Below are positions 2,071-62,850 of a stretch of 64,000 nt of DNA, in pieces. The stretch's first letter is position 1, and each line of letters starts with the position of its first letter. Origin of the DNA: Euprymna scolopes (taxonomy: Eukaryota); NCBI GenBank assembly GCA_053919585.1, contig CM132803.1; one strand, given 5' to 3'. The notes beneath the pieces are model-generated. The model had not been told where the DNA came from, ran no database searches, and was given only the letters and a program-made list of their open reading frames with translations. Both the position numbers and the translations under genes were made by a program.

Positions 2071-2244
2071 GCAGCCATTAAACGCACAACACACAAAGTA
2101 GGACTGCTAGTTTACTGCTCACATCAACTGTACAAAGGAAACATAAGGATGTTATCACAATATGGCTGCTAAAGCTGAAGCTTTCTTCTTTCTCTGGATA
2201 TAACTTTTATTTAAACCCGGGGTTAATTGGATTTTATTTCAAAT
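2071..2244 (+). promoter_or_regulatory. g1 conserved promoter/5' element and putative non-coding exon 1
   Basis: GCAGCCATT(2071)-N19-TAGGAC(2099); donor AAT|GTAAGT after 2244; same arrangement upstream of all paralogs. TSS not determined. Confidence 0.7.
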
Positions 2245-3169
2245 GTAAGTTTATTTTCTTTCATTTTGCCCTAACTTTAATTATTACTAATTTTTAAGCT
2301 CTTTAAAGCAATTAAAAAGCATTCTGTTTATACTTAATACATTACTGTCATTATTTATCAGAGTAATCGTTAAAAAAACGCTGCCTTTGTTTCATTTATT
2401 TTATTCATCATTTTTATGCTACTAAATTTTGCTTGTTATATTAATGCATTGTAGTTAACATGTTTCAGTGTTAAATATATCATTTTTTGTTCCATGAAAA
2501 AACTGAAATATGTTTCATATTTCTCTTAAATGTACTATTTTTAACAAGCTGTTATTGAAAAAAGACAGAATACTACAATTATAGCATCAGTTTAGGATCA
2601 TATTTTGACGTGATGAATTAAGAAATTTATGCTTTCTTTAAGTGTGAGAAAAAAAATGAAAAATAAGTAATCTTGAAAATTTAGCATATCAAACACAAAC
2701 AATTTATTAAAATGTAAAATTCATTACAATTTTTCTAGTTTCTCTAGTTTTAAGTTTTACAGTCGTTTTTCAAAACAAACGATATTGAATATTTTTTCTG
2801 AATCAAAAACTATTACTTTAATAAATTAAACAATATGATTTAAAAATATATCTTTTAACTCAGTTATTTAAAATTTTATGCACATTATATTAACAGAACT
2901 GTTTCTTTTTAATTTTGTTTTTCTCTCAATGCAAAATTTAATTTGTATTCTATAGGGTCTATTTCATTTCAGAAACTTAGATTTTCTTATTAGATAGTAT
3001 TTATTTACATTTTAGAGAATATAAAATTAACTAAAATAACATTTTTCAAGGGAAAATTTAATGAAAATATAGTGATTAAAGTAGATGAAATGTAAACAAT
3101 GGAATTTAATATTAATTATTGAGTCCCCCCCTCACCTACAAAAGCACTAACAATAGACTTCATTATAAT

Positions 3170-3317
3170 TACCATACTTTGGGGTAATTGTGCCAAATCC
3201 GGGGGTAATTGTGCCAACTAAAAAAAGTGTTTTTTATATGCGTGGTTGCCAAAAGAGCACTTTTAGTTAGTTGGCGCAATTACCCTGGACTTGGCACAAT
3301 TCGCCCAATGTGCGGTA
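3170..3317. mobile_element. MITE (non-autonomous DNA transposon, TA-flanked, Tc1/mariner-like ends)
   Basis: About 60-bp imperfect terminal inverted repeats (TACCATACTTTGGGGTAATTGTGCCAA.../...TTGGCACAATTCGCCCAATGTGCGGTA), each with two GGG(T/C)(A/G)ATTG(T/C)GCCAA-like subrepeats; in g1 intron 1. Confidence 0.75.
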
Positions 3318-4149
3318 TTTGTTTATGTAATTGAAATAAAGTTAACAAATGTAGATAATACATTATGAATGTTCTTACTGGCAGGTACATGCACTTTCCT
3401 CTGTGAAAAAATGTCTAATATTTTTAAAAATATATATATTAATATTTCTCCATCTTTTTAATTATTTTTAAAATTTATACTTAAAGGTGTTCCTTATATT
3501 TATAATGATGAAATGAGAATTTAATAATCTCAGGAAATTATTTATTAAAATATTTTTGTTTAAATTTTTATAAAAATCAAACGTCCCATTTACTCTAATA
3601 ATAATCATTTGTTACTTTTATATGATAATTATTCTATATTAATATGTCCTCCTGAAAGAATTTGTTTAAAAAATATCCAATTTAGTGTGCCTATAATAAT
3701 AACAACAGCACTAATATGAAAAAATATATCATTTCATTTTCTGATTAAAAATAAATCATTGAGAAATAAGACCTGGTTTCGGTTATAGAATGCTATCAAA
3801 CATCCTTTATAATAAGTGAACTATTAAAAGAGTCCAGGGAATTGTGTACATATTAATGTACTTAAAATATAAAAGTGATTATTTGTTGAATTAATATGCA
3901 AAATGAATACGTTTTTAATGCATGGAAAAAATATTTTAAGTAAAAAAAATAGAACTACTTTTTACAAATAGCTGAGAATATCTGTTAATGTTGTTGTTTT
4001 TGTCATATTGAAAATCTGAACTTAAAAAATGCGAGTACCTTGTAAAAAATTAAATAATCTTTTCAAAAATTAGCTAAAAAATTTCATAATTATTTTTGAT
4101 TTCAGAAACAGTAAACAATTCATCAGAAACACATCTACAATCAAAACAA

Positions 4150-6573
4150 ATGAGTTATAAATATACAGTAATGATGATGCTACACATAACTTTTATTGTT
4201 CTGTCTGCTTTACAAGGTTGTTTATGTACAGACCTTACCTACATTATTGAAGAAGGAAAAAGTCCAAATACATATTTAGGAAATATTGCAGTTGATTCAA
4301 ATATCATGGAAAATATTGATTCTAAAGACAATAAATTGATTTCATTCAGTTTATTGCAAGGAAGTATTGCAGGCAGTACTCAGTTATTCCGTGTTTCAAA
4401 GAATACAGGAAAACTGTACACTGCTCAAACATTGGATGCTGAATCACTTTGTACTTATAATGTAGAATGTTTTCAAATGGTTGATATTGCTGTAAAGAAA
4501 GCAGCAACTTTTATGAAATTAATTGAAATCAGAGTTATTATTAAAGATGTAAATGACCATCAACCTGAGTTCCCAGATAAACAAGTCAACATAAAATTTT
4601 CAGAAGAATCTACACAAGGGTCAAAACGTTTAATTCCAAATGCATTTGATCGAGATGTTGGAACTATTAATTCCCAGATTACTTATCATTTAAAAAATAA
4701 AGAAAATGAACCTTTTACTTTATTTATTTCAAAAAGTGTTGATGGAACATCACAATTAGCGATAAATCTAGAGAAAAAGCTTGATAGAGAAATTAAAATT
4801 TTTTATAAGATTGAAGTAATTGCAAAAGATGGAGGTTCTCCCCCAAAAGAAAGTACTCTTTACGTTCATATAACTGTAACTGATGTGAATGATAATTCTC
4901 CAGTGTTTTCTGAAAATTCTTATAATATTTCAATCAAGAATAAACCTGATGCTGCTTTGCCTCTGACTAGCTTATCAGCAAAGGATTTAGACTCTGGAGA
5001 AAATGGCAAAATCTCATACAGTTTCAGTTCAAAAACATCAGACGTTTCTAAAACTCATTTTGATTTAAACTCAGAAACTGGAGAAATTTTTCTAGTGAAG
5101 AAATTTACAACTGGGCAAAAACTGAAATATAAACTTTATGTTAAAGCTTCTGATGGAGGCAATCCTCCATTAAGTTCTCTGGCCATGATTCAAGTGAATG
5201 TGATTAATGAACAGAACAATGCGCCAACTATAAATATCAATTTTGCCTCAACATCTGGTGACAAATTTATGAAAATTTCAGAAGATATTAAGGTTGGAAG
5301 TTTTATTGCATATGTGAAAGTTACAGATCCAGATCTTGGACAAAATGGAGATGTTACTTGTACTCTTGATCACAATAAGTTTCAACTCCAAAGTCTGGAT
5401 ACAAAGAAATATCAAGTAATTGTAAAGAAACCAGTGGACAGAGAGAGTGAAGATCACCATGACATTAGGATCAGTTGTGAGGATAAAGGAAATCCTCCTC
5501 TTGAAAGTGAAAGCAGATTTTCAGTCCAAGTGATGGATGTGAATGATGAACAGCCACAATTTTCTAAACAATTATTTAAATTCTTCATTGATGAAAACCA
5601 GAGATCGAAAATTCCTATTGGCACAATCAATGCCACAGATCCAGACTTGGGACTTGGAGGTAAACTGTCTTTTTCTTTAGTGAGCACCAATAAACAATTT
5701 GTACCATTTCGAATCACTGAAAATGGATTAATCTCTTCAATTATGTCTTTAGACCATGAGTTTCAAGATACTTATAATTTTGAAGTGTTTGTAAAAGACA
5801 AAGGAAGTCCATCATTGAATAACACAGTGAATGTGATTGTTAAGGTGAGAGATGAAAATGATAATGCTCCATATTTCACATTTCCCAGTGTTAATCCTTA
5901 TAATATGGATGTAACATATTATCCGCATCATACAAAGAACATCAGCCAGATAAAGGCATCAGACAGTGACAGTCAAGAGAATGCATTTCTAAAATATGAA
6001 ATAATCAGAGGCAATAGCAAACAGATATTCAGCATCAACCAGTACACTGGTTTGTTATGTTCAACTCATGTCCTAAGCCAACAAGATGCTGGCTCATATG
6101 AGCTGGAGTTTCTAGTAAAGGACAGTGGTAGCCCAGTTCTATCAGCCAGAACTACTGTATATTTAACACTGACCGTAAGCAACAGGACATCAGAAATGTT
6201 AAATGCTGTTAACATCAAAAAAGATAATAAGATCCACCTGACTTCAGCAATTATCATTGTGTCTGTAGCAGTGACAATAGCTGTGATCATTACAGCTTCA
6301 ATCTCAGTGTGTATCCTTCGCTGTTGCAATCCTCGAAGTGTTCCAGTAGCAGAGGGTGGATATGTGAGTAGTGGTCAGAGACATTTGATAAGTCCTCCTT
6401 ACCCAGCCAATCCTTGGTCTAATGTTGCTCTTCCTACAAGTGATGCAGTTGATATGAGAAGAAGCAGTCAACCACCAACACCCAGAATGCAAACCCATCC
6501 TTACTCAAGTGCTCAACAAATGCTGTCATCTCAAGCACCAAAACTACAGCCAACTATGGATTCAGTATCACAG
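4150..6573 (+). CDS. Protocadherin g1 exon 2 (signal peptide, EC1-EC6, TM, proximal cytoplasmic tail)
   Basis: Acceptor ttcag ends 4105; first ATG 4150. Cadherin motifs DxNDxxP, LDRE, AxDxG; EC1 C-X5-C; TM AIIIVSVAVTIAVIITASISVCIL. Donor CAG|GTAATA after 6573 (phase 0). Confidence 0.93.
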
Positions 6574-10873: not shown

Positions 10874-11157
10874 AGATATACCCATCACAATATTGTAATC
10901 CGCCACCATCAAAAAACGACCAGACCACAGAGATGAGATCCTTGGGACAAGTTGTCAGTTACCCTAGTGATACTACAATAGTGGCAAGAGGTTTTTATAC
11001 ACCTTATATGAATGAAAATAGCCCACTAACTGATGGAAAATCATATTTAGGTGCTGATATTAGCAGCCCTGTTGGTAGGCATTCACAATCGAGGACTGTG
11101 TCTGCTAGTGATAGTCAATCTTCTGTTAATAGACCCCTGCCACCTGTACCACAGTAA
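10874..11157 (+). CDS. Protocadherin g1 terminal coding exon
   Basis: tttag|AG ATA TAC CCA; EIYPSQYCNPPP...YPSDTTIVARGFYTPYMNE...NRPLPPVPQ-TAA. The spliced product is in frame, 956 aa. Confidence 0.9.
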
Positions 11158-12606
11158 CCCCTCTACATCTAGAAAATAATAGTCTAAACTTTAATTTTGG
11201 CATTCATTCAGCAAATGTATGTATTAAACTAATGTCACATTTTGTAATCTAGATCACATGACTCACCCCCAAAATATTTCGCAGAAAACTTTTCATAAAT
11301 ACTAAAATAGAATATGAAAATTAGATTGTAAGATAAATGTAATTATTTAGTCTTTATAATCATATAATAATTAATATTTTCAACTGTAAATTTTCTAGAT
11401 AATATGGAAAATTGTATAAAAAATAGAAATACCTGTGAAGTGTTGGTTTACAATCAGTACCATTATTTATTTTATATTAATTTAATTCTAAAATTCATAA
11501 ACTGTGACACATGTTTTAAGACATCCTTATTGTATAAATAACTAAAAATAATCTTTTTATTTCTATATCATTCTTCTTTTTTCTTTCCTCTTTTTCTCTT
11601 TCTTATTATTATATCAAAGTATCATTATTATTATCTATTATTCTTAGAGAGAAGTAAATAGACTTATTATTTAGCCATCTAATTTAGATATGCATTAGTG
11701 GTATATATAGAAAAATATGTAAATTAGATGACTATGATGAATAAAGAAAGTTACTCTTACTCTAAATGCTTACAGAGAAAATAAGAAATATTAGTGAGAG
11801 GGGCAAGAGAAATGCATAATTAAGAAAGAAATAGATCAGCTTTTTCACTTAATTGTGAATTATAACTAATTAGAACAATTAAAACAATTTTTGTTTTCAT
11901 ATATAACTTAATCTGAGAACTAAATAATACTTTAGCATATATTTTGTCATATTAAACATATAGGAAAACTCCTTAAAGACCAAACGTTGAATATCTCGCA
12001 TTCAGTATAATAATAGATTATGGTATCATTTAAAAATATAACCATAGTTTTTCATAATATCATACATAAACAAACATTAACTCAAAACTTAAACTAAACA
12101 ATGGAGTTCAACATTTATTTTCAAATATTTATTCATTTGTTTACTGATTTCAAGATCATTTTAGTTTTTCCTTTCATTATAAAATTTTATAAAAATATAT
12201 GTATAAATAAAATAAAATATTGATAAAACATAAAATACTTATCAATTGCATACTTATTATTAAGATATTAAAACTTTTTTATATATAATGTTTGATAAAA
12301 AGTTAACTACTTTTTTATTTTGCGAATTGTAAAAACAAATAACAAAATGTATGAATGCGAGAAAATTGTTTTAGCTCTACTCAAGTAAGGAATGGAGGAA
12401 GAAAAAAATTACTAATGGACGAATTAATGTCTAAATTTTTTGAAAACAAATTTTATTTTTAGGTATGATTAATTTTTTCTTTAGATATCTATTTTGTCAT
12501 TATTTACTAAATGATCTTGAATTAAAAAATGATATTTTATTATAAGACTCAAGTTTTAATTTATTTACTGCCAAAACATAAAGATATAACTAACAGGAAA
12601 TAAGCA

Positions 12607-12766
12607 GCAGCCATTACACACAAAGCACACAAAGTAGGACTGCTGGTTACCCCCTCATACAGACCATACTCTTGGATGAGACAAAATAAAAGCAATTGGA
12701 AAAATTAATATTTTTTGTGATGAAATCAGCATTTTACCATAAATCCTACTAGAATTTATTTCTAAG
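12607..12766 (+). promoter_or_regulatory. g2 conserved promoter/5' element and putative non-coding exon 1
   Basis: GCAGCCATT(12607)-N19-TAGGAC(12635); donor AAG|GTAAGT after 12766. Confidence 0.7.
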
Positions 12767-13748
12767 GTAAGTTTATTTCCCTCAATTCTCTATAATTGTT
12801 TATTTCTAAAATATGTGTGGTTTGATGATGAATGCATTTTGTCAAATATACAGGACGCCATTGCTATTGTTAGAAGATTAACTACTTAGAAATACTTTTC
12901 TTTGTTTTTCACTCTTTTCTTTGTATTTTGATTTTATTTTAGATCTTGTCTCAATTATCATATATTTTTAATCATAAAAAATATTATTTTCATTGACTTT
13001 TTATTCTTATTCTAATGTGTTATGTTATCACAAAAGAAAGTCGTGATTTTAACGTTTTTCTTGTTTTCTTCATAGTTATATCATGTGTATATAATAATTG
13101 TATAAACTTTATTTTCTTATAACAACTATTTTTCGTATCATAAATTAGAAAATAAATCCGGCTATTTATATGCAATTTTTTATATTTTATTATAATTTAA
13201 TCTTTCAACCATTGAAAATTATAACTGTATCTAAAATGTTACTGCTTATATTAACATCGAATTTTTTCTTATTTTAATCAAATATTAAACTCAGTTTTTT
13301 TTTAACTGCTATCAGAATTTGTTTAACAAGAATTAAAATAAGTTTTCTGATTTAAAGATTATTTTTAGTATAATTTGTAAATGGATGCAAATTCAATGAA
13401 AATATTACTTCAAGCAACAATTAAAATGATAAAAACAATAAGAAATATAATTAAAATAGGTCACATATTTTGCATCATGTGTGAATTAAATCTGCTTTAC
13501 CTTTAAATGAAAATGACATAGTATCAATGTAGATATTTTATCACTGATATTTCTTACTGAGTTTTGTTATTTATTCAAAAATGAAATTATTTATATTTCT
13601 GGAAGATGAGTTGATGTTTTTCTGCTGATAATATCTATAAATAAATTGAAAAATTAAAATCTTGAACCAAAAGCAATGTCTTTTTTTCTTTCAGATGAAC
13701 TGGGGGTTTCCTATTTTACAATAACGTAAATAGGATTGTTACACCAAA

Positions 13749-16160
13749 ATGTTGCTATTAGTAAACACATTATTGCCAACATACATTCTACTATTAACTC
13801 TACATGGATCTGTATGCATTGATCTTACTTACACAACTGAAGAAGGTAAAAGTTCAAATACTTACTTGGGAAATATTGCAGTTGATTCAAATATCATGGA
13901 AAATATTGACTCCAGTGATTACAGGTCTATTACATTCAGTTTATTACAAGAAGGTGTTGGCAGTACTCCATTATTCCGTGTCTCTAAGAATACAGGAAAA
14001 CTATACACTGCACAAACACTGGATGCTGAATCACTTTGTACATATAATGTAGAATGTTTTCAAATGGTTGATGTTGCTGTGAAAAAGGCATCCACATTCA
14101 TTAAATTATTAGAAATCAAAGTTATCATTAAAGATGTAAATGACCATCAACCTGAGTTCCCAGATAAGCAAATTAATATTCAATTTGATGAAGATGATGG
14201 AAGAGGGGTGAAGAGGTTAATACCTCATGCTGTAGATAGAGATATTGGAATTTTGAATGCTCAAATTACCTATGAGTTGAAAAAGAAAAAAACAGAACCA
14301 TTTACATTATTTGTTTCAAAAAGTGTTGATGGAACATCTCAATTAGCTTTGAATTTGGAGGAAAAACTTGATAGAGAAATCAAAAGTTTATATCAAATTG
14401 AAGTAATTGCAAAAGATGGTGGCAATCCTTCAAAACAAGCGAGGTTAAATGTTCAAATCACTGTAATTGATGTGAATGATAATTTCCCAGTTTTTTCTGA
14501 AAATGTTTATAATGTTTCAATTAAAAACAAACCAGATGCTGTTTTGCCTATTACTACTCTATCTGCAAAAGATTTAGATTCTGGCAAAAATGGTCAAATA
14601 TTATATCATTTCAGTTCAAAAACATCAGATATTGCTAAAACTCATTTTGATTTAAAATCAGAAACTGGAGAAATTTTTCTAGTGAAAAAATTTACAACTG
14701 GACAAAAATTGAAATATAAACTTTATGTTAAAGCTTCTGATGGAGGCAATCCTCCATTAAGCTCTCTAGTAATGGTTCAAGTAAATGTGATCAATGAACA
14801 GAACAATGCGCCAACTATAAATATCAATTTTGCCTCAACATCTGGTGACAAATTTATGAAAATTTCAGAAGATATTAAGGTTGGAAGTTTTATTGCATAT
14901 GTGAAAGTTACAGATCCAGATCTTGGACAAAATGGAGATGTTACTTGTACTCTTGATCATAATAAGTTTCAACTCCAAAGTCTGGATACAAAGAAATATC
15001 AAGTAATTGTAAAGAAACCAGTGGACCGAGAGAGTGAAGATCACCATGACATTAGGATCAGTTGTGAGGATAAAGGAAATCCTCCTCTTGAAAGTGAAAG
15101 CAGATTTTCAGTCCAAGTGATGGATGTGAATGATGAACAGCCACAATTTTCTAAACAATTATTTAAATTCTTCATTGATGAAAACCAGAGATCGAAAATT
15201 CCTATTGGCACAATCAATGCCACAGATCCAGACTTGGGACTTGGAGGTAAACTGTCTTTTTCTTTAGTGAGCACCAATAAACAATTTGTACCATTTCGAA
15301 TCACTGAAAATGGATTAATCTCTTCAATTATGTCTTTAGACCATGAGTTTCAAGATACTTATAATTTTGAAGTGTTTGTAAAAGACAAAGGAAGTCCATC
15401 ATTGAATAACACAGTGAATGTGATTGTTAAGGTGAGAGATGAAAATGATAATGCTCCATATTTCACATTTCCCAGTGTTAATCCTTATAATATGGATGTA
15501 ACATATTACCCGCATCATACAAAGAACATCAGCCAGATAAAGGCATCAGACAGTGACAGTCAAGAGAATGCATTTCTAAAATATGAAATAATCAGAGGCA
15601 ATAGCAAACAGATATTCAGCATCAACCAGTACACTGGTTTGTTATGTTCAACTCATGTCCTAAGCCAACAAGATGCTGGCTCATATGAGCTGGAGTTTCT
15701 AGTGAAGGACAGTGGTAGCCCAGTTCTATCAGCCAGAACTACTGTATATTTGACACTGACCGTAAGCAACAAGACATCAGAAATGTTAAATGCTGTTAAC
15801 ATCAAAAAAGATAACAAGATCCACCTGACTTCAGCAATTATCATTGTGTCTGTAGCAGTGACAATAGCTGTGATCATTACAGCTTCAATCTCAGTGTGTA
15901 TCCTTCGCTGTTGCAATCCTCGAAGTGTTCCAGTAGCAGAAGGCGGATATGTGAGTAGTGGTCAGAGACATTTGATAAGTCCTCCTTACCCAGCCAATCC
16001 TTGGTCTAATGTTGCTCTTCCTACAAGTGATGCAGTTGATATAAGAAGAAGCAATCAACCACCAACACCCAGAATGCAAACCCATCCTTACTCAAGTGCT
16101 CAACAAATGCTGTCATCTCCAGCAAGAAAACCAGATTCAGCTCCAGACACCCTTTCACAG
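13749..16160 (+). CDS. Protocadherin g2 exon 2 (SP, EC1-6, TM, proximal tail)
   Basis: Acceptor ends 13694; ATG 13749; six cadherin repeats; donor CAG|GTAATG after 16160. Confidence 0.93.
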
Positions 16161-24058: not shown

Positions 24059-24208
24059 GCAGCCATTACTCAGGCAACACACAACGTAGGACTACTAGCT
24101 TATGTGGAACACAAAGAAGAATTTAAAAAAATACCACAATATAGTTATTACTATGAATTCAATATTTTACCAACATGCAAGTTAATGCAAACAGAAATAA
24201 GAACAAAG
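24059..24208 (+). promoter_or_regulatory. g3 conserved promoter/5' element and putative non-coding exon 1
   Basis: GCAGCCATT(24059)-N19-TAGGAC(24087); donor AAAG|GTAAGT after 24208. Confidence 0.7.
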
Positions 24209-35094: not shown

Positions 35095-35957
35095 AAATAA
35101 TATGACATTATTTTAATCCCTAACATACATGCATATTTACACAAAATACTTCTAAGGTTTTTAAAATGAATTCATTAATTAGTTAGATTTCTTCTAACTT
35201 AAAACTAGTGAATTATTTTTTTTAGCTTTTAGTCAAATCTTTGTCTACAATTCTTGCTTATAAAAATAATAAATCTTAATTGATTTAAAAAAAGTTTTTT
35301 GCTACTTTTATTCATGACCAAGTATTATACTTTTTTTTTATTGCAAATAACTTATCTTTGTTTTTAAATCCGTGTTTATTTAATAAATACAGAAAATAAA
35401 TGTACAAACATGTCCAGTCTTTTACTTATAGAATTTATAAAAACTTCGATTAAATCATTGTTTTTTATTTGTTTTTGGAGCTATGTTTCTTTTATAATAA
35501 ATGAATGGTGATGATGACAGACTGACAGCTTATTAAATAGTTTTAAAAATTGCTCTTATAATAATTTTATTTTGGTATCACTTATTTTCAAAATAGAATT
35601 TAAAGATGTACAACAATTATATTTGAAATTTAAATTAGTAACAGAACACAAGAACTAAGCATTTTAGGTTGTATTGTTTTATAGAATTTGTTACAAAGAT
35701 GGGGCATTAACAATGACAGAAAGAGAAAAGTAAATTATGACGGAAGAATAGCATTATTTCCTATGTATTTGTAGATATCTTTTTCTTTAATTAATTTATA
35801 TTTAATTCAATATTTGCACCTATTTCTATTTTAATTTATTAAAATAATGATGATAAGTATATTTACAAAAATATAATTTCTATGGATAAAATTAAAATTT
35901 GTTTACTCAGTTTCGTAGCTCATGATGTTTTTCATTACTCTCTAAAGAGTGTCTGTA

Positions 35958-36104
35958 GTAGCCATTTTACAGACTGCATATAACATAGGACTGCTGGATA
36001 ACATCTAGAGTGAAACAAAGAAAAACATGTCACCGTGATGGAATAAAGCAGTATTATATGAAGCATTCTCAATGTTGCTGTCATAAACAACTTTCAAAAG
36101 AAAG
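35958..36104 (+). promoter_or_regulatory. g4 conserved promoter/5' element and putative non-coding exon 1
   Basis: GTAGCCATT(35958)-N19-TAGGAC(35986); donor AAAG|GTAAGT after 36104. Confidence 0.7.
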
Positions 36105-41198: not shown

Positions 41199-41236
<38 letters not shown>

Positions 41237-46291: not shown

Positions 46292-46433
46292 GCGGCCATT
46301 ACACAGGCATCAAACTACATAGGACATGTAGTTCCTCTGTAAAAGACAGGAAAATGGTGGATTATCTAAGTATTAAAAATAATACATCTATTAACATACC
46401 TTCTATTTGGTGTGAACAGATTTAAGAACAAAG
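46292..46433 (+). promoter_or_regulatory. g5 conserved promoter/5' element and putative non-coding exon 1
   Basis: GCGGCCATT(46292)-N19-TAGGAC(46320); donor AAAG|GTAAGT after 46433. Confidence 0.7.
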
Positions 46434-51022: not shown

Positions 51023-52447
51023 CTTTATTTCAATTTTTAAATGAGTTTTGTTTTTTATTGTGTGGATTTTTCATAGAAAGATTCTATAGTTTCGGTATTT
51101 TAGTTATAAATTTACTTCATTGATTCAAGATAACATTCCATATTTTTCTTAATAATAACAAACATGTTCATCAGTTTTCTAACACTACTATATGGATGCT
51201 GATATAGTTAAAATGCAGAATAGAAATTAAGCCCTGTATTTGTGTGCATATCATTTTTACGATGGAGCAAAGCATACTGTCTAAATATTTAGATGTATCT
51301 TTCCTTTAAATTGATTTGGAAAGTAATTTTAGATCACCAGATTATCAAAAAATCTTTATAATGTATAAATAGATACATATTACAGAAAACATGTTCCTGT
51401 AGCAAGAAAATAAATTTATTGTCTTACATTTTTATTGAACATTATTTATTAAGCAATGTTATTTATTCAAATGAGGTCCATCATGATCACAAATGTTATT
51501 TAGCTTTAGCATTTCTTGATAATCTTGATATTTAGATAAAAAAAAATAAGAAAAAACTCATCTCTGAAATGGACAATGTGGAGAGATGCTTTGAAAGATG
51601 CTATCAAAATATCCAGTACTTGTGACAACTAAAAAATATATTCAACTAGATGATGATGATAATGATAATGATGATGATAGTCCCTATAAATCAAGTTTTA
51701 AAATTCCAAATTATATTTTTCAAATTTTACAAATAAAACTATCAAGTGTATTTTTTCTTAATATTGCATTCTTAAGTTTATTTTAAGTACAATATTTTAT
51801 TATGGATTTACACAGTTGTTTTTTTGTTTTTGTTTTTTTTTTGTTTTTTTGCATAGCTTGAGGAATTGAATTTTAAAACTTTTAGCTGGGAGGTGATTGG
51901 TTTTGAAGAATTTCAGGATGAAAAAAGTTACATTATCGAGTTGATCGTGTCTGGACACATCAGACTAGAAACATAAGAAAAGGGTCACCATCCTCCATGA
52001 ATAACACTAGACACTTCCACTAAAATATAAATCAACTATTATTTGAAGGAAACATTGTATATAAAGAGAGTTACTAAGTTTGCTAGCTTTTGTCTCAAAC
52101 AAAATGTGGTATCTTGCCATTCCATATCTCACCTAATCGGTTCTACCATAGGATGAGAACAAGATAGCTCTTGTTAGCACGGAATTTACTTGAAAACTGA
52201 TTTGTATTTGGCACACATCCAGCTAGGATGGAAATCAGATTCCAGTGCGCATGTCATTGGTTTGCTAATTGCTTGTGTATCAATATGCTTACTGAACTAC
52301 AACTTGACATAATGCAGGATTTTATGTACAGCTACTACAAACTAGAAAGAATGTTATGAATACTTTCTATATAAGATTCAACATTAAATTTCTCATATGT
52401 TAAATTAATGACCTTGTTATGTACTGATATTTTAAAATTCTTTTCAG

Positions 52448-52737
52448 ATATATACCCTTCTCAATATTGTAATCCTCCGCCTTCACAAATTGATCAATGC
52501 CGTACAACAGAGACAAGACCCTTAGGACAGACTGTCAGCTATCCTAGTGATACAACAATAGTAGCAAGAGGTTTCTACACATCCTACATGAATGAAAATA
52601 GTCCTCATGCAGATGCAAAGTCTGACTCTGGTGGTGAAAACAATAGTTTATCTAGTAGACAGTTACAATCAAGAAATATATCTACAAGTGGTAGCCAGTC
52701 TTCAATCAACAGACCACTACCACCCTTACCATCCTAA
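52448..52737 (+). CDS. Protocadherin g5 terminal coding exon
   Basis: ttcag|AT ATA TAC; DIYPSQYCNPPP...YPSDTTIVARGFYTSYMNE...NRPLPPLPS-TAA; spliced product 950 aa. Confidence 0.9.
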
Positions 52738-53429
52738 AAATAATATGCCATTACTATAATCATTAACAAAATATATATTTACTCAAAATCTTAAGGTTTT
52801 TAAAATTTATTGGATAGTTAGTTTTTTTTAATTTAAACCTAATTAAAATACTTTCACTTCCAAAAAAAGTTTATAAGTCTAAATCATATATTTCTTTGCA
52901 TAGAATTCCCACTTATTGAAATAATGTATCTTCTTTATTTTATTAAAATAGTTCTTCATATTATTGAGTACAAGAAAATGTTTTTGTTATGCTGCTTTAT
53001 TAAGCCTTTGTTTAACCAGTACTTGAAATAAATTTCTGTCATGTATTTTATTTTACTGAATTTTTTTAATCTTATATTTTTTAAAATTATTATTTTAATT
53101 TCTCCTGGCTTCATCAAATCTTCCCTTCTATCATTACATCTAAATTTATTTTTCTAAAGTTATATTCCTTGAAATCTGATAACAAATAAATGAATAGCCA
53201 ACTTGTAAAGTCATTGAAAACTCACTAGGATCATTTATTAACATTATCATAAAATATAAAATAAAAAAAATGCTATTGAAGAAATTAAGCTAAATTTATT
53301 AAAAATGCATGTCTGTAGTAAAATATAATTTGTATATAACACATGAAGCTGTAGTTCCAATCCATTTGGTTGCTAGTTTATTTATCCACAGATTCCTACA
53401 AGAGTTTTAGAGATAGACACCAATAACAA

Positions 53430-53853
53430 TATATATTCTAATTACCCGGGTATTTTGAAACATAAGTTTAAGAATATCATGGGATTTGTATTTGTACTTG
53501 ACATACATATTAAAGACATACTTCTTTTTTACATTATTTTATTGATTTGTTAAAAATTATAGGGATTTAAAAAATAATAGAAATTTTAATAATAGATTAA
53601 AAACTTGCAACCAAAGTGCAGACTGGTACTCAATAATTTCCAGCATATGCTAGGTGTGTTCAAGGGTCTAAGTACTATAAATTTACTGACATTTATTTCA
53701 ATTAATATCACTTTACTTACACCCTCTTCCACCAGTCAATGTTGAGTAAATCATTGAGTTTCAATAAAAATATTGAATAAAGAAAATAATAGGCTGAGAG
53801 CTAAAGGGCAAATTACTCATACAGTCCTGGACAACGCCGGATGTACCTGCTAG
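53430..53853 (+). mobile_element. Helitron-like 3' end (5' boundary uncertain)
   Basis: CCTGGACAACGCCGGATGTACCTGCTAG|T at 53826-53853 resembles the 3' end at 21946-21973. It is absent from the homologous g3-g4 spacer. Confidence 0.5.
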
Positions 53854-54134
53854 TTATAAAATAAGCTAACGTTGCTTATTCTATATAATTTGTTAAAACG
53901 ATAAGTTTACCATGACAGAAAGAAAAGTAAAAATATAATGGACGAATAACACTTTTTCATTGCATTTTAAGAATTATTATCCTTTTATTAGATAAAATTT
54001 AACTCAATATTTAATCATTTCTTTTTTAATTTATTAAAATAATGGCATAAGGATTTTTTTTTTTTTTTTAATGTATAAACCCGTTTTCGTAGTTTCGTAG
54101 CCTATAATGCTTTACTCTCTAAAGAGTGTTTATA

Positions 54135-54288
54135 GCAGCCATTTTACAGACTGCATAAGACATAGGACTGCTGGATAATATCTAGAGTGAAACAAAGAAA
54201 AACATGTCACCATGATGGAATAAAGCAGTATTATGTGATGTGTTCTCGATGTTGTTTTCATATAGTATAAACAACTTTCAGAACAAAG
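54135..54288 (+). promoter_or_regulatory. g6 conserved promoter/5' element and putative non-coding exon 1
   Basis: GCAGCCATT(54135)-N19-TAGGAC(54163); donor AAAG|GTAAGT after 54288; closely similar to the g4 region. Confidence 0.7.
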
Positions 54289-56080
54289 GTAAGTTGCTTT
54301 TATCTAATTTTACTATTTTTATATATTATAGTGCAAGAAAGTCTAGAGAGAAAATTGTAAAAAATGAATTGCAAGATAATTTTCATCAGTCATAATGTAC
54401 AGAAAATGTACACATGATATAGATTAATCAAAATAAGGACTACTGAATATTTCTGCATGGTTTTCCTTTTATATTCAGTACATTTTCTTTAATCATTTTT
54501 TATAATGAATCTTTTATTTATTAATATTTCAGAATAAATATAATTTATTAGAAGCTTTTTAGGAAATAATTGTTTTTAATCGTTTTATTTTAATTGTATA
54601 TTTTACTTTTAAATTAATATAGAATATTTATGTATCTGTTTCTAAAATTCTCTATTATTCTATAATCTTTGATGAAAATAATTAAATGTCCTTTTTCATT
54701 TCTCAATTAGATATATACCATGTACATCTCATTTTGATATTTCCAACTTGATTAATACAAGTAATAACTGATACAGGAGTATAAAAATCATTTCTGAAAT
54801 ATTTTCTACTGATATTAATGTTTGAAAAGTTAAAAACATGTTAGAAGAACAAAAACTAAAATAGCACAATTTTATGGCCATTTTCATCCATCTATTTATT
54901 GCTATCATTCTAATTGTGATAATAAACAACTTTTCAGTTTTAAGATACATAACTTTTATCATAAATATTTAAATTCATAGATCTTTATAATTATAAGATG
55001 GTAATAAGATGTTTCTCATCTATACATATTATTTTTAATTATTTTAAAAAATTTTAATCAGATACTAAGATTTAAAAAATTCCAAGACATAAAATGAAAC
55101 AAAATTTTTTAAAATCTTCTTTAAAAATATAATTTAATTACAAAATTAAATCCATCAGTTTCTTCACACACAAATTAGTCACTTTAATCTTTTATTAATA
55201 GTTATAAAAAGAATGAGTTATTTGTAATCCTTGGAAATTTTATAGGAGCTTGAAAGCATTTAAACTGTCATTTCTGGTTTTAACATTTTTAGCAAATTTT
55301 CGTGTATTAAATGTTTTAGAAGCTATTTATATCCAATCACTTTATAATATAGAAAAGAATTAGTTATATTTTTATAACAACTTGGTCGCAAAAATGATAC
55401 CATAATAATTAAATTTAACATCCAAAATCCTATAAATAAGAAAATGGTAAAAAATGCATAGCTTTATTGAAAAAAAAAAGGGTGAAACGAAAATGAAAAT
55501 AAAAAGCATTGTGTAGGTATAGCTAGTTGTCCATATTTTATTACAATAAATCAGTATTGTAATTATATTTTATAATTTTATGTGTTTACTTGAAATTTTT
55601 TGTTTATTTGAAAGAGTTTGTTTATTTCTCACAATTGTAACTTTACATATTTTTTTTATTTAATTACTGATATGAAAATTTGGACCTTAATTTGAATCTT
55701 ATGCTTTTTCTTTTTAAGAAAATATCTAGGTCTATATAAAGAGAACAATGAAAAACCTTGTTGATTTATTTTTCAAAATAAAAGTACCATAATTTTTCAT
55801 GTTCTGGAAATTTTTATGTTAGCAAATGGTTTTGCCAATAGAAATATTATTTTATTTTTTATATTTATTCATAATAATGATTGTTAAGACAAACAGAAAT
55901 GCAGTCTTGAATTTGAAATGATATTATAATATTTTTCTACTGAATTATAAAGAAAAATACTTTTCACATAATATGTAAAATTTAATGTATACTTTAAAAC
56001 TGTGACAGTGTATTTTTTTTTTTTTTTCATATTTCAGATATCAGAATCAACACATTGAAAATAATTATTCATAAGTAAAA

Positions 56081-58480
56081 ATGATAATATTACAATCATA
56101 CATCCTTATGTGTATCTTGCCTCTGTTTAAGTGCATAGATCTCACATATTATGTTGAGGAAGGTATAAGTCCTGGAACTTACTTAGGAGATATAGGTATT
56201 GACTCAGAAGTGATGAAAGACACATCTCCAGATGAACAAAATAAAATTACTTTTAGCCTGTTACAACAAGGTGTCATTGGTACTTCTCCAATGTTTAGAA
56301 TTTCAGAAGAATCAGGAAAACTCTACACAGCTCAAACTCTAGATGCTGAGACTATTTGTACTTTTAAAAAAGAATGTTTTAAAATGGTTGATATTGCTGT
56401 TCAAAAAACAACAACTGTTTTTAAATTGTTAGAAGTGAAAGTGATTATACAAGACATCAATGATCATCAACCTGAATTTCCAGATAAAAAAGTTAATATT
56501 GAGTTTTCTGAAGGTGACCGAAAAGGAATGAGAAAAATTATCGCAAATGCAATAGACAGAGATGTTGGTGTTCTCAATTCTCAAATAACCTACCATTTAA
56601 AAAGAAACAAAGATGAACCTTTTTCGTTATCAGTTGCAAAAAACGTCGATGGTACATCAAGATTGGATATAAATTTAGAAAGCCAACTCGACAGAGAAAT
56701 AAAAGATTCCTACAAGATTCAAGTGATTGCAAAAGATGGTGGATCTCCAGCAAAACAAAGTACATTAGATGTTCTTATTACAGTGACAGACGTCAATGAT
56801 AATGCTCCAATCTTTACTCAAAATGTTTATAATGTTACTGTTAACAACATGGTTGATACTAATAAAGCTGTGGCAACATTATCGGCAAAAGATTTGGATT
56901 CAGGTAAAAATGGAATGATTTCATATTATTTTAGTAGTAAAACTTCAGATATTGGCAAAAACATTTTTACAATTAATGAAGATTCTGGAGAAATATTTTT
57001 CAATAAAAAGATAGAATTCATGCAGCAATCAACATATGAACTATATGTTAAAGCCGAAGATAAAGGTGACCCTCCACTCAGTTCTATTGTAATGGTTGTA
57101 GTAAATTTAATTAATCAGCAGAATAATCCTCCAAGTATTAAAGTAAATTTTGTTTCAACATCAAAGGACAACACAGTTGATATTTCTGAAGACATAAAAG
57201 TTGGTAGTTTCATTGCATACGTGAAAGTAATTGATACGGATATTGGCAATGATGGAGAGGTTAGTTGTTATCTTTCACATAAAAAATTTCAGCTTCGCAA
57301 TATGGGCACACAGAAATATCAAGTTATAGTAAAAGATTATTTAGACAGAGAGAGGAATGACCATCATGATATTATCATCGATTGTAAAGATAAAGGAAAT
57401 CCTCCATTGAAAAGTAGAAGTAAATTTTCAGTCCAAGTGATGGATGTGAATGATGAGCAGCCACAATTTTCTAAACAATTATTTAAATTCTTCATTGATG
57501 AAAACCAGAGATCAAAAATTCCTATTGGCACAATCAATGCCACAGATCCAGACTTGGGACTTGGAGGTAAACTGTCTTTTTCTTTAGTGAGCACCAATAA
57601 ACAATTTGTACCATTTCGAATCACTGAAAATGGATTAATCTCTTCAATTATGTCTTTAGACCATGAGTTTCAAGATACTTATAATTTTGAAGTGTTTGTA
57701 AAAGACAAAGGAAGTCCATCATTGAATAACACAGTGAATGTGATTGTTAAGGTGAGAGATGAAAATGATAATGCTCCATATTTCACATTTCCCAGTGTTA
57801 ATCCTTATAATATGGATGTAACATATTACCCACATCATACAAAGAACATCAGCCAGATAAAGGCATCAGACAGTGACAGTCAAGAGAATGCATTTCTAAA
57901 ATATGAAATAATCAGAGGCAATAGCAAACAGATATTCAGCATCAACCAGTACACTGGTTTGTTATGTTCAACTCATGTCCTAAGCCAACAAGATGCTGGC
58001 TCATATGAGCTGGAATTTCTAGTGAAGGACAGTGGTAGCCCAGTTCTATCAGCCAGAACTACTGTATATTTGACACTGACCGTAAGCAACAAGACATCAG
58101 AAATGTTAAATGCTGTTAACATAAAAAAAGATAACAAGATCCACCTGACTTCAGCAATTATCATTGTGTCTGTAGCAGTGACAATAGCTGTGATCATTAC
58201 AGCTTCAATCTCAGTGTGTATCCTTCGCTGTTGCAATCCTCGAAGTGTTCCAGTAGCAGAAGGTGGATATGTGAGTAGTGGTCAGAGACATTTGATAAGT
58301 CCTCCTTACCCAGCCAATCCTTGGTCTAATGTTGCTCTTCCTACAAGTGATGCAGTTGATATGAGAAGAAACAGTCAACCACCAACACCCAGAATGCAAA
58401 CTCATCCTTACTCAAGCAATCAACAAATGCTGTCGTCTCAAGCACCAAAACCACAGCTACCTGCAGACTCCGTTTCACAG
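56081..58480 (+). CDS. Protocadherin g6 exon 2
   Basis: Acceptor ends 56037; ATG 56081; six cadherin repeats and TM; donor CAG|GTATAT after 58480. Confidence 0.93.
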
Positions 58481-59035
58481 GTATATTGAATAGTTTCCAC
58501 ACTTTACATTAGTTGCATATAATTTTGTATGTAACACCTTTTCCTTATTTATTTTTATATGAATATATACGGGAATATCTAAAAAATAAATTACATTCAT
58601 AAACATTTCTCATATAACTATATAAAACTATTGAAATTCACATTGTTTTTTTACTTACTTTCTAATATAAAATATTAATATTTGTATTTTTATCATAAAA
58701 TTAAGGAAGAATTATATTCATAAATGTTCAGCATATTTGCTTTATTTCATAAACCTGTACTGTTAATCAGAAGTAAAACAATGATATGAATAATTCAATT
58801 CAAATATTCTAGTAACAACTATTTTTGTATGTCATATTATAATTGCAAAAGTTCTTGGATCTTTTTATTGGACTTTTTATTGGACTATATAAAAACAAAT
58901 AATGCTATAATAACTTTGTAATTTTAGTAATTCTTTTAAAGTATAATATTTTTTCTGGATGAAATTAATTGAAAAAATTAAAGAAATTTTATATAATGTT
59001 TAAGAAATTTTTAAGATGGTGATTGATAATTTCTA

Positions 59036-59395
59036 TTATTTGGACTACTATATTATTTGTTTTATTCACAGTGTTTCAGTTGATGTAACCTCTGACCTAC
59101 TTTAGGTCCATCTTTTTGAAGTTGGGAATTCTTGTCAAACTCGGAAACCTGTACAAAATTTTTAACAAAAACTTTTTATTTAATCCATACGACTGAAGAA
59201 GAACTGATTTTTAATCAATATTTCTAATCGTTAATTCATATGTCCAGGTTTTAGTTGTTCAAAATTCTGAACAGGTTCCCAAATTCGACATAAAACTTCT
59301 CAAGTTTGAATAGAAGACTTCCAAGTTTGAAAAGAAATATGGAGCTTACATTGTTGTGAATATAACGACCGATATGAAAATATTAGACCGCATAA
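59036..59395. mobile_element. Degenerate interspersed element with inverted termini (same family as ~6695 and ~43830)
   Basis: Left ATTATTTGGACTACT...TTATTCACA versus right TGTGAATATAAC...TTAGACCGCATAAT; core TTTATTTAATCCA. Confidence 0.45.
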
Positions 59396-60774
59396 TCTAA
59401 ATAACACAAAGAATTATGATATTTAACTAATTTGTTTTTCTTATAAGTAAAACGTCATAAGTCTGTTTCAGCAAATTGTCTTTTTACACACTGGTGTAAG
59501 GGAGAAAACTCATAATGCCTTAAATGTATCATTACTAATTTTACAATAAGGTGGAACATCTAGATATGAAATTTATTGGTTCCAGCTTGGCTTTTGTATC
59601 TTGAAATTTGTGTATCCTGAAAGGGATTTTATACAGAAATCCTCTAATCCATTTGAAGCCCTATTTAAACACTCTTTTATAATAAGTGTAAAACCAGTAT
59701 GAAATAAAAGCCAAATAATACATAACTTAACCATTAATACTTTCACTTGCTAATTATTTTTGGTGAACTTGTACAATGCACACATACCTTATATATTTTT
59801 TCTTTTCGTTTTTTTTTAAATTTTTTCAGCAGCTTATTGTCGATTGAACACTAATCTACCAGATTATACCCCCACCAAAATGCAAAAAATTCAATATTTA
59901 AATATTTTTAGGGGGTGTTTAGTTTCTAATACAATGTGTGTACGATAAAAATTAAAACAGAAAAGTTTTCTTCAATCTATATTCTTCAAATGTGGTGAAA
60001 ACTGTATGCATACATTGACTTTTCAAATTTTAAAATAATCTTAATTATGGGGGATAGGTAAGTAGAAAAAATAAATTCAAATTCCAGAAAAAATGTTTTC
60101 CAGATAAAAATCAACACGAATATTTCCAGAAAATAGCTAAAAAAATTTAAAACCCTGACTTTAAATAGATTTTAAAGACTTAGCTGCCTGAAAAATATTC
60201 TTTCTGTCATTCGTATCTTTCATATTCTGAAAATTTGACGTATGCAAGGATAAAAAAATTCTCACATCACGTTTTGTAAGTTGAAAATTTCATAAGCAGG
60301 GTCTTTCCTATCTAGTGGTTCCACTGTATCAGAAACACATTTATTCTTTTATAAAATTGCATATAAACGTTAATTATCGAGTTAAAAAGCATGTAGACAT
60401 ACTGATATTATCAGTTTAAAATGTTCAAGTTGTAAATTATTACTGTCAGTATTTAAAAAAATTTTCATATGTTCAAAACAAGTTACTTTGAAAATCCTTT
60501 GAATGAATTAGAATTTAGTTTTGTGCAAACATTTGTAATTGATCAGTGAGAAATAGTGGGTGAAATAAATGGAAGGCAGAATAACTAAGAAGAGCAGAAA
60601 TGCAATTACATTGGAATAAATCAGAACAAAGTATAACAATATAATTTAGCAGCTATTTTTACCTCCACTATGTAAGAACAATTTTTAAGTTACTTTTATT
60701 TTGATTTCTGATTGCAGATCTCATTCAGTGTTGTAATGTTGCATCACTTATATTGACTTCTGTCTTTTTGTTAG

Positions 60775-60937
60775 ATGTATCTTCAAGATGTAGCTTTACC
60801 TGCTGGCAGGGACAGAAACAAGAAAAGAACTGAAAGGACCCAAGACTATTCAAGTGGAAAATCTATTAAATCTTCACAAAACCCAAATAGACTTGTTTGG
60901 AGTGAAGAAGAGACATTACAAACGGAAAATATAACTG
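60775..60937 (+). CDS. Protocadherin g6 exon 3
   Basis: ttag|ATGTATCTTCAAGAT to G|GTAAGT; 163 nt, near-identical to g4 exon 3. Confidence 0.9.
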
Positions 60938-61605
60938 GTAAGTTTTAAAAGATTTTACAAGAAACACAAAAACATTTTATTTCTATTCCAGCATGTTTAA
61001 TTCTTTCAACTATCAGCAAAACATAAAAACAGTGAACTTGTTTACAAAAAGAAACAAATAAAAAATCAGAAAGGCATTGTGGTAGATTTAATTTTATAAT
61101 GAAATTATTTTTTATAGGAGTTTTAAGGGATTTGTTTTCGTATTTATACCAGGGAAATTTTTATTTCAATAAATAACTGATTAGTAAATATGTAGAGGCA
61201 AAAAACGTAGACATGAAGAAAAAGAAATACAATTTTGTTGCTTTAGAGATAAATCAGTTTTACAAATTGTTCAGTATATTAAAGTAAGCAGTTATTCTCG
61301 TTCATTAAAATATTAATATTTCCAAGTATGTTGGTATTTATGAAGGATGATAGCAATGCAGAAAACCTGGAATGGTAAAAGAAAGGATGAACAAAAACAA
61401 ACAAAGACAATATTTGAAGTAGTAATCTTCATAATTATTTATTTGTTTTTCAATGGATCTTTCATATATTATATCAACATTTCTTTCACTTTTTTCACAC
61501 GTTTTATTGCATTGGCTTCTTGAATGTGGTTAGCTATATCAATTTTTTTCTTCTTTTTTTTACTTTTAGTTTTTATTTCAGTTCATTTTCTTTCTTATTT
61601 TTCAG

Positions 61606-61895
61606 ATCAGAGTACGTCCCAATATTGTAATCCGCCTCCATCACAAAGTGACTTACTGCAGACACCAGTGATGCGGCCATTAGAACAAACCATCAATTAT
61701 CCAAGTGATACTACAATTGTAGCAAGGGGCTTCTATACATCTTACATGAATGAACATAATCTCCAAACAGATTCAAAGAATTACTCAGGTGTTGATAGTA
61801 GCAGTCTCCCTGAGCGATGTTCACAATCAAGAAACGTACCTGCAAGTGGTAGTCAGTCCTCAATTAACAGGCCATTGCCTCCTGTACCTCACTAA
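61606..61895 (+). CDS. Protocadherin g6 terminal coding exon
   Basis: ttcag|AT CAG AGT; DQSTSQYCNPPP...NRPLPPVPH-TAA; spliced product 950 aa. Confidence 0.9.
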
Positions 61896-62710
61896 TTATA
61901 CATTACATAGATGCTTATATTGAATAATTATTTGAAAACTCTGTATGATTTACAAATAATTATTTAATTCAAATAATTCAACTTCAAGTAAATCAATTAC
62001 TTTATTTGATAAGAAATGAAATTATTTTCATTTACATTTATTACTGAAAATTCATTTAGATAATTAATATTAAAATTAATTTTGTAAAATTATATTTTAT
62101 AAAATATATTTTTACAATTAATTTTAATTCCTATATATTATATTTCTGTTAATTTATTTAAACAAGAATGTAATCTTGATCAAAACTTTATTTATATTCC
62201 CTTATGTTATATTTTTAAAGTGACAGTGCTTAGAAAGTCTAAATGTACAGAAAAACGTATACTTTTTATTTAGAAAATTAAAAATAATATAGTTTTAATT
62301 AAAAGGTTAGTAAATTAATATTTTTTACTAAGAACTTGAATTTTAATTTTTCAAATTTAATTTAACTATTATATAGTTTATAGAGAGAAAGAAACGAAAA
62401 TAAAACTGTCTCGTTTTTCTTTGTTAGATAGTGTGGAAGTGTAAGAGCCTATTGAAGCAGTAATAGAAAGAAGAAAGCAGTCCTTGATAGAAGAGTAGCT
62501 TCCATGGATATTAGTGTTCTGGGTGGTTTTTGATATTTAATTAACAATCACATTTTTTTTTACATGTATATGCGTTTCTATTATTTTTATGAATTTTCTA
62601 TTTATTTATTTTATGAAATTATTTTAGTTATCAGTATTTAAAAAATGTTATATAACTGTTTCGTAGTATTCAATAAGAAATAACTGGCCTATCACAAAAA
62701 AAAACATATA

Positions 62711-62850
62711 GTAGCCATTACACAGGCATCACACTACATAGGACACATAGTTTCTTTGTAAAAGACATTATAATGTTGGATCATCTGATTATTATAAAGG
62801 ATACATCAATTAGTATAACCACCTTGTCTTAAGACGATTTAAGAACAAAG
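62711..62850 (+). promoter_or_regulatory. g7 conserved promoter/5' element and putative non-coding exon 1
   Basis: GTAGCCATT(62711)-N19-TAGGAC(62739); donor AAAG|GTAAGT after 62850; similar to the g5 region. Confidence 0.7.

What the first reader, a model, noticed from the sequence alone, without database searches (positions are those of the whole stretch)
2071..62744. Bipartite fixed-spacing element G(C/T)(A/G)GCCATT-N19-TAGGAC in front of all seven gene starts
Seen: the motif starts at 2071, 12607, 24059, 35958, 46292, 54135 and 62711. The AC-rich spacer varies in sequence but is exactly 19 nt in 7/7 cases. A GTAAGT donor follows 139-173 bp downstream each time, and the surrounding DNA is otherwise unalignable between gene types. 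Known: GCCAT(TTT) is the YY1/Pho core; strict spacing is the hallmark of Inr-DPE-type core promoters; vertebrate clustered Pcdh promoters share a CTCF-bound conserved sequence element used in stochastic promoter choice. Inference: a shared cluster-specific promoter element, with no obvious CTCF-like sequence, that may let paralogs compete for a common enhancer or factor.
Basis: partly seen in the sequence, partly recalled or inferred. Interest (0 to 1): 0.82.

Follow-up and report, generated by a model that had tools for sequence, protein, structure and literature searches.

The report
Shared start-site box of cephalopod protocadherins
Every protocadherin gene in this squid/cuttlefish-type tandem array begins with the same 34-base two-part sequence at the start of its non-coding first exon; it is very probably a family-wide promoter element, an invertebrate counterpart in layout (not in sequence) of the conserved promoter box of vertebrate clustered protocadherins, though its function is still only inferred.

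Summary
GYRGCCATT-N19-TAGGAC occurs exactly seven times in 64 kb, always on the + strand, with none expected by chance. Each copy sits at the head of a 140-174-nt non-coding exon ending in GTAAGT, 0.85-2.1 kb before a protocadherin coding exon. The seventh gene runs off the window.

Flanking DNA between most copies aligns no better than shuffled sequence. The two boxes are 92-100% identical, and the spacer has kept its length while the nearby flanks gained indels. This is an island under selection, not residual paralogy or gene conversion.

No reads could be laid, so the transcription start is placed only indirectly, at or just upstream of box A. The support is the k-mer shares of RNA runs, a shared AT-rich trough followed by a GC rise, and the fit of GCCATT to both the initiator consensus and the YY1 core.

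My best reading is a start-site-proximal core-promoter element. A linear 5'-leader RNA signal is the main rival. One related-species transcript carries a diverged copy 64 nt inside its 5'UTR.

There is no CTCF-like site, no shared constant exons and no RNA structure. Cluster specificity and promoter choice could not be tested. An overlapping-window reader noted the same motif.

The parts
2071..2104 (+). Motif copy 1 (box A GCAGCCATT, 19-nt A/C-rich spacer, box B TAGGAC), gene 1
12607..12640 (+). Motif copy 2, gene 2
   Evidence: the RNA-run k-mer shares for 12540-12790 fit a transcript starting near 12598-12609
24059..24092 (+). Motif copy 3, gene 3
35958..35991 (+). Motif copy 4, gene 4 (recent paralog of copy 6)
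46292..46325 (+). Motif copy 5, gene 5 (recent paralog of copy 7)
54135..54168 (+). Motif copy 6, gene 6
62711..62744 (+). Motif copy 7, gene 7 (coding exon opens ~63627 and runs off the window)
12607..12766 (+). Predicted non-coding exon 1 of gene 2, with an approximate 5' edge. The equivalent exons are 2071-2244, 24059-24208, 35958-36104, 46292-46433, 54135-54288 and 62711-62850. Each ends at AG|GTAAGT or a near variant and each contains upstream ATGs.
   Evidence: A 5' non-coding exon spliced shortly before the ATG is seen directly in related-species transcripts L002-L006.
12427..12547 (+). AT-rich trough (GC 0.12-0.18) from -180 to -60 of the motif, present before all seven copies, followed by a GC rise to 0.51 at the motif. 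It is a candidate nucleosome-poor promoter tract.
35911..35918 (+). Upstream box TTTCGTAG. Other copies are at 46245, 54085, 54093 and 62659. These are its only occurrences in the window. They lie 42-52 nt before motifs 4-7, at a variable distance.
13749..16160 (+). Large coding exon of gene 2 (signal peptide, six cadherin repeats, TM), from the ATG to the conserved TCA CAG|GTA. The others are 4150-6573, 24957-27353, 37816-40212, 47139-49544 and 56081-58480. The predicted acceptor lies up to ~55 nt before the ATG (0 nt in genes 5 and 7).
10874..11157 (+). Gene-specific terminal coding exon of the preceding gene (tail ending ...RPLPPVP, then stop). Copies are at 874-1163, 22976-23265, 34805-35094, 45190-45479, 52448-52737 and 61611-61895. 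Its stop lies only 793-1449 nt before the next motif, which bounds the promoter region.

Best explanation
The 34-bp block is a start-site-proximal core-promoter element that every protocadherin gene of this array inherited through tandem duplication and has kept under purifying selection.

Box A (G-Y-R-GCCATT) lies at the transcription start or within about 20 nt downstream of it. It acts as an initiator-type or YY1-type site. Box B (TAGGAC, containing GGAC) is a downstream contact held at a fixed distance. The basal machinery, or a factor bound with it, would therefore read both boxes on one face of the DNA and fix where transcription of the non-coding first exon begins.

Shown:
- the element, its strand, and its position at the head of exon 1;
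- its conservation amid randomised flanks;
- the invariant spacing.

Inferred:
- the exact TSS;
- action at the DNA level;
- the identity of the binding proteins.
For: - The motif occurs 7/7 on the gene strand and nowhere else in 64 kb.
- GCCATT at +3 and TAGGAC at +28 are the only fixed-position shared hexamers in the -400..donor regions, apart from the splice donor.
- Ungapped identity is 0.92 for box A, 1.0 for box B and 0.59 for the spacer, against 0.30-0.37 for the flanks.
- Gapped flank identity of 0.51-0.60 equals the shuffled baseline of 0.56 for all pairs except two recent duplicates.
- 4-fold-site identity in the variable N-terminal coding part is only 0.4-0.6.
- The spacer length is invariant, while the TTTCGTAG-to-box-A distance (42-52 nt) and the box-B-to-donor distance (107-141 nt) vary, even between recent paralogs.
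- An AT-rich trough at -180..-60 and a GC peak at the motif are present in all seven copies.
- Seven RNA runs hold 0.58-0.63 of the sampled words of 12540-12790. A contig running from the motif start to the donor would give 0.59.
- GCCATT fits the human initiator consensus BBCA+1BW (PMC5287114) and the YY1 core. [quoted passage not shown]
- The promoter must be compact, because the previous gene's stop codon is only 0.8-1.45 kb upstream.
Against: - No read-level TSS or splice evidence exists for this window.
- Five RNA runs hold 0.90-0.95 of the same stretch, so some RNA or contaminating DNA extends upstream of the motif.
- In a related species, transcripts L002/L003 carry a diverged copy with the same 9+19 spacing, box B intact and box A changed to GCTGTCAGT. 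That copy lies 64 nt inside the 5'UTR, so there the element is transcribed rather than at the start.
- GGAC sits at +25..+28 or +29..+32 depending on which Y-R step initiates, not in the canonical DPE register.
- Only 2/7 copies fit the extended YY1 consensus (CATnTT).
- Other related-species protocadherin 5'UTRs (L007-L017) show no clear copy, although most may be 5'-truncated.
Confidence: 0.6

Rival explanations
1. The block works at the RNA level. It would be a linear, unstructured A/C-rich leader with two protein-binding boxes at the 5' end of every protocadherin mRNA, controlling translation, stability or localisation in neurons.
For: - The element lies inside the transcribed exon in L002/L003, and probably in the window's own transcripts.
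- Conservation is strand-specific.
- The spacer is 77% A+C on the sense strand, which disfavours secondary structure. No consensus fold exists, as expected for an accessible leader.
- All the first exons carry upstream ATGs, which suggests translational control.
Against: - Exact spacing between two short boxes is more typical of DNA-protein geometry than of linear RNA sites.
- The element coincides with the compositional switch from the AT trough to the exon, and box A fits initiator and YY1 consensus sequences.
- There is no Rfam family and no covariation.
Confidence: 0.2
2. The block is the binding site of a long multi-zinc-finger protein, a functional analogue of CTCF at the vertebrate CSE. 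That protein would tether each promoter to a shared enhancer and underlie promoter choice within the array.
For: - A 34-40-bp asymmetric footprint with fixed internal spacing suits 10-12 fingers.
- One copy is present per gene.
- The layout parallels the vertebrate CSE.
Against: - No enhancer, looping or expression-choice data are available.
- No CTCF-like sequence is present.
- The published atlas describes ubiquitous and cell-type-restricted subsets, not stochastic choice.
- The semi-degenerate spacer argues against continuous base-specific contacts.
Confidence: 0.12
3. The block has no function. It is leftover similarity from duplication, or a short gene-conversion tract.
For: - The array is young in parts: g4/g6 are 95% identical and g3/g5 are 91%.
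- Gene conversion is active. An 851-nt coding block is 97.8% invariant in all six genes.
Against: - Flanks on both sides are at the shuffled baseline for all but two pairs.
- Conversion would homogenise the spacer as well, yet the boxes are 92-100% identical while the spacer is 59%.
- The spacing is indel-free although nearby segments gained indels.
- A copy with the same spacing survives in another species.
Confidence: 0.05

Closest known systems
Conserved sequence element (CSE) of vertebrate clustered protocadherin promoters
   Same: Both have one short conserved element per paralog, in a fixed orientation, just upstream of or at the start of each protocadherin transcription unit in a tandem array, with otherwise diverged promoters.
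   Different: - The sequence is unrelated, and there is no CGCT/CTCF-like motif.
- These genes are complete units with their own terminal exon, rather than variable exons spliced to shared constant exons (PMC9068888).
- CTCF binding and stochastic choice are undemonstrated here.
Initiator plus downstream element core promoters (Inr-DPE/MTE of Drosophila, Inr-DPR of human)
   Same: Both are bipartite with strictly fixed spacing and lack a canonical TATA box. Box A fits BBCA+1BW/YYANWYY, and box B contains GGAC, which fits the first four positions of RGWYV.
   Different: - The GGAC register is 1-3 nt off the canonical +28, whichever Y-R step is taken as +1.
- The TSS is unmapped.
- The element seems to be shared by one gene family rather than shown to be general.
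YY1/Pho initiator-type sites (AAV P5+1 initiator; YY1 sites just downstream of human TSSs; LINE-1 5'UTR YY1 site)
   Same: The GCCAT core is present in 7/7 copies, with CCAT on the sense strand as in the P5 initiator. The position at or just after the start matches the preferred zone of YY1 (PMC11269187).
   Different: The extended consensus is met in only 2/7 copies. The strictly coupled second box 19 nt away is not a YY1 feature. No binding data exist for a cephalopod YY1.

Membership tests
Inr + downstream-element (DPE/DPR-type) core promoter | Initiator consensus overlapping the mapped +1 | tested here: inconclusive
   GCCATT fits BBCA+1BW in 7/7 copies, and positions 2-3 are always Y-R.
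Inr + downstream-element (DPE/DPR-type) core promoter | Downstream element at a strictly fixed distance from the initiator | tested here: met
   The spacer is 19 nt in 7/7 copies, while adjacent segments vary by 3-34 nt.
Inr + downstream-element (DPE/DPR-type) core promoter | Downstream element matches RGWYV at +28..+32 | tested here: not met
   GGAC lies at +25..+28 if the A of GCCATT is +1, or at +29..+32 if position 3 is +1. The fifth position is T in 5/7 copies. The DPE consensus is taken from my own knowledge of the literature.
YY1/Pho binding site | GCCAT core | tested here: met
   Present in 7/7 copies on the sense strand.
YY1/Pho binding site | Extended consensus CCATnTT / GCCGCCATCTT | tested here: inconclusive
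   Copies 4 and 6 read GCCATTTT. The other five read GCCATTAC or GCCATTAA.
YY1/Pho binding site | Bound by the YY1 orthologue | not testable with these tools
   Needs EMSA, DAP-seq or ChIP.
Vertebrate Pcdh CSE / CTCF promoter-choice system | CTCF-type motif in each promoter | tested here: not met
   The window has only two 2-mismatch CTCF-like hits, both downstream of coding exons and within chance (0.81 expected).
Vertebrate Pcdh CSE / CTCF promoter-choice system | Variable first exons spliced to shared constant exons | tested here: not met
   Each gene has its own terminal coding exon, in agreement with PMC9068888.
Vertebrate Pcdh CSE / CTCF promoter-choice system | Stochastic, mutually exclusive promoter use | not testable with these tools
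   Needs single-cell isoform data. PMC12240821 reports ubiquitous and restricted subsets only.
Structured cis-regulatory RNA | Conserved secondary structure with covariation, or an Rfam family | tested here: not met
   RNAalifold gives 0 pairs. There is no Rfam hit in the window.

The most novel reading that the evidence does not exclude
The block is the cephalopod counterpart of the vertebrate protocadherin CSE, evolved independently. It would be a family-specific promoter tag read by a lineage-specific multi-zinc-finger factor from the co-expanded C2H2 family, or by YY1 acting as a looping factor. That tag would let the many full-length protocadherin genes of an array be chosen combinatorially by shared enhancers, giving neurons individual surface codes.
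Probability: 0.12. Interest if true: 0.9.

Novelty: new variant of a known kind. Interest (0 to 1): 0.55.

Why it matters
Cephalopods expanded protocadherins independently of vertebrates. How hundreds of complete genes are regulated is unknown, and the papers I could search describe no promoter element for them.

A precisely defined, strand-specific 34-bp element with two invariant boxes gives a concrete handle on this question. It can be scanned genome-wide, mutated in reporters, and used as bait to find the binding factor.

If it proves family-specific, it would be a striking case of convergent promoter architecture in neuronal self-recognition gene arrays. If it proves generic, it would still be one of the first defined core-promoter motifs of a mollusc.

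Tried and rejected
- **Own-species transcripts.** Exact look-up failed: none of the six proteins is in the collection.
- **Related genomic contigs.** ENA and NCBI contigs (237-720 kb) and several Logan contigs returned no DNA.
- **Related-species transcripts L007-L017.** No clear copy was found. L011-L013 show only a weak A/C-rich resemblance, which I do not count.
- **Metagenome scans.** The strict pattern gave 0 hits. The looser pattern gave 10 chance hits in microbial contigs without A/C-rich spacers.
- **Hairpin between GCAGCC and GGACTGC.** Rejected: copies 3, 5 and 7 break the pairing by eye, and RNAalifold finds no pairs.
- **CTCF-like site.** Rejected.
- **REST/RE1-like bipartite site, ZNF143 ACTACA box, Drosophila MTE.** Considered from memory and dropped for poor matches. 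These were not tested with tools.
- **Poly(A) hexamers.** They are too frequent in this AT-rich DNA to place the upstream gene's 3' end.
- **Conserved GGATAT|GTGAGT inside the coding exon.** Rejected as a donor, because protein conservation continues past it.
Full report
**What is there**

The window is AT-rich (GC 0.22-0.34). It holds a head-to-tail array of protocadherin genes on the + strand.
- Six ORFs of 802-833 aa each carry five or six Pfam cadherin repeats.
- A seventh ORF opens at about 63627 and runs off the end.
- The best named relatives are Acanthosepion pharaonis protocadherins at about 60% identity. Unnamed ENA contigs carry paralog-rich arrays at 70-84%.
- The source is therefore a decapodiform cephalopod. 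I did not determine the species.

**The observation**

GYRGCCATT-N19-TAGGAC matches exactly seven times, all on the + strand, at the stated coordinates. Shuffles give 0.00 expected. Relaxing to three mismatches adds only three unrelated hits, against 1.7 expected.

Each copy is followed after 140-174 nt by GTAAGT. A polypyrimidine-AG acceptor then lies up to about 55 nt before the ATG of the large coding exon, 0.85-2.1 kb from the motif.

The same architecture, a non-coding 5' exon spliced shortly before the ATG, is seen directly in related-species transcripts L002-L006.

**It is an island of constraint**

With the copies stacked without gaps:
- Box A is 92% identical between non-sister copies and box B is 100%.
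- The spacer is 59% identical.
- The flanks are 30-37% identical.

With gapped alignment, the 200 nt upstream, the rest of exon 1 and the first 200 nt of intron 1 score 0.51-0.60. Shuffled sequence scores 0.56. Only m4/m6 and m5/m7 score higher, because they are recent duplicates.

GCCATT and TAGGAC are the only G/C-containing hexamers shared by all seven regions at a fixed position, apart from the splice donor.

Four-fold degenerate sites in the variable N-terminal half of the genes are only 40-60% identical, so neutral sites are near saturation.

Gene conversion does operate here. An 851-nt coding block is 97.8% invariant in all six genes. It cannot explain two perfect boxes separated by a diverged spacer and bounded by randomised flanks.

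The invariant 19-nt spacing is meaningful, because neighbouring distances drift:
- TTTCGTAG to box A varies from 42 to 52 nt, even between recent paralogs.
- Box B to the donor varies from 107 to 141 nt.

**Context that bounds the promoter**

A repeat family found in passing turned out to be a roughly 290-nt terminal coding exon. It has a TTTTCAG acceptor and an open frame ending ...RPLPPVP followed by a stop. It belongs to the preceding gene. Its stop codon lies only 793-1449 nt before the next motif.

Two things follow:
- Each gene is a complete unit with its own tail, as published for cephalopods (PMC9068888). There are no shared constant exons.
- The 3'UTR of gene n and the whole promoter of gene n+1 must fit in about 1 kb.

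All seven motifs are preceded by an AT-rich trough (GC 0.12-0.18) from -180 to -60. GC then rises to 0.51 over the motif. Four copies also carry TTTCGTAG at about -47.

**Where is the start site?**

Direct evidence could not be obtained.
- The window's proteins are absent from the collection used for transcript look-up.

Indirect evidence comes from the 251-nt query 12540-12790, which covers 67 nt upstream, exon 1 and 23 nt of intron.
- Seven RNA runs hold 0.58-0.63 of the 19 sampled words. A spliced contig running from the motif start to the donor would hold 0.59.
- This places contig 5' ends near 12598-12609, give or take about a dozen bases.
- Five runs hold 0.90-0.95. This could be unspliced RNA, read-through from the gene upstream, or DNA.

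Together with the compositional switch, I place +1 at box A or within about 20 nt upstream of it, with moderate confidence.

**What it resembles**

- GCCATT fits the human initiator consensus BBCA+1BW (PMC5287114).
- It contains the YY1 core with CCAT on the sense strand. [quoted passage not shown]
- The two variable positions of box A are always Y then R, which gives a second possible initiation step.
- Box B contains GGAC, which matches the first four positions of the DPE consensus RGWYV (my own knowledge). It lies 1-3 nt off the canonical +28 register, whichever +1 is assumed.
- No CTCF-like site accompanies the promoters.
- No consensus RNA structure forms, and no Rfam family matches.

**Cross-species evidence**

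One related-species gene (P0110, 57% identical; transcripts L002/L003 from two runs) carries GCTGTCAGT, then a 19-nt A/C-rich spacer starting ACACA, then TAGGACTGC.
- The spacing and box B are kept.
- Box A has changed to a sequence that is again initiator-like (TCAGT).
- That copy lies 64 nt inside the assembled 5'UTR. The element is transcribed there, which keeps an RNA-level function alive.

Other related transcripts either lack it or stop short of it.

**Verdict**

The most likely mechanism is a start-site-proximal, bipartite core-promoter element retained in every paralog (0.6). The rivals are:
- a linear 5'-leader RNA signal (0.2);
- a multi-zinc-finger, promoter-choice tag (0.12);
- non-functional remnant (0.05).

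Family specificity, factor identity and any role in promoter choice remain untested. I found no description of such an element in the cephalopod protocadherin literature available to me.

The scan's reader of the overlapping next window noted the same motif before its seven genes (s1-288450). That is an unchecked lead suggesting the element continues along the array.

Noticed in passing
window 5558-6408, 15145-15995, 26338-27188, 39197-40047, 48529-49379, 57465-58315: An 851-nt block of the coding exon (about aa 461-753, roughly EC5 through the TM and proximal tail) is 97.8% invariant across all six genes, including 4-fold sites. The N-terminal repeats have 4-fold identity of only 0.4-0.6. This is concerted evolution by gene conversion, creating a 'constant region' inside separate genes.
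   Followed up: partly
window 874-1163, 10874-11157, 22976-23265, 34805-35094, 45190-45479, 52448-52737, 61611-61895: Each gene has its own ~290-nt terminal coding exon, with conserved YPSDTTIVARGFYT and a C-terminal RPLPPVP. It lies 2.8-7.4 kb after the large exon and 0.8-1.45 kb before the next gene's motif. The first copy belongs to a gene upstream of the window.
   Followed up: yes
window 6573/6574, 16160/16161, 27353/27354, 40212/40213, 49544/49545, 58480/58481: The large exon appears to end at a conserved TCA CAG|GTA (phase 0), but the terminal exon needs a phase-1 partner. At least one small middle exon is therefore probably still unrecognised. The D20 repeats at 8046, 44656 and 60758 are candidates.
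   Followed up: partly
window 35958-54134 versus 54135-64000: Genes 4+5 and genes 6+7 look like a duplicated two-gene unit: g4/g6 are 95% identical, the g5/g7 heads are 98% identical, and promoters m4/m6 and m5/m7 are alignable. Promoter similarity follows the gene upstream as well as the gene downstream, as expected for offset duplication units.
   Followed up: partly
window 33863-34300: A 145-aa ORF fragment matches reverse transcriptase (RVT_1, E 3.9e-15) in the intron between the large exon and the terminal exon of gene 3. It is a decayed retroelement.
   Followed up: no
window 27576-27589 and 49757-49770 (- strand): An identical weak CTCF-like 14-mer (2 mismatches) lies about 220 nt after the predicted large-exon donors of the paralogous genes 3 and 5. 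The count is within chance expectation.
   Followed up: no
L004-L006 versus L002-L003 (related species): The same protocadherin gene shows two 5'UTR isoforms, with or without an extra ~170-nt non-coding exon between exon 1 and the coding exon.
   Followed up: no
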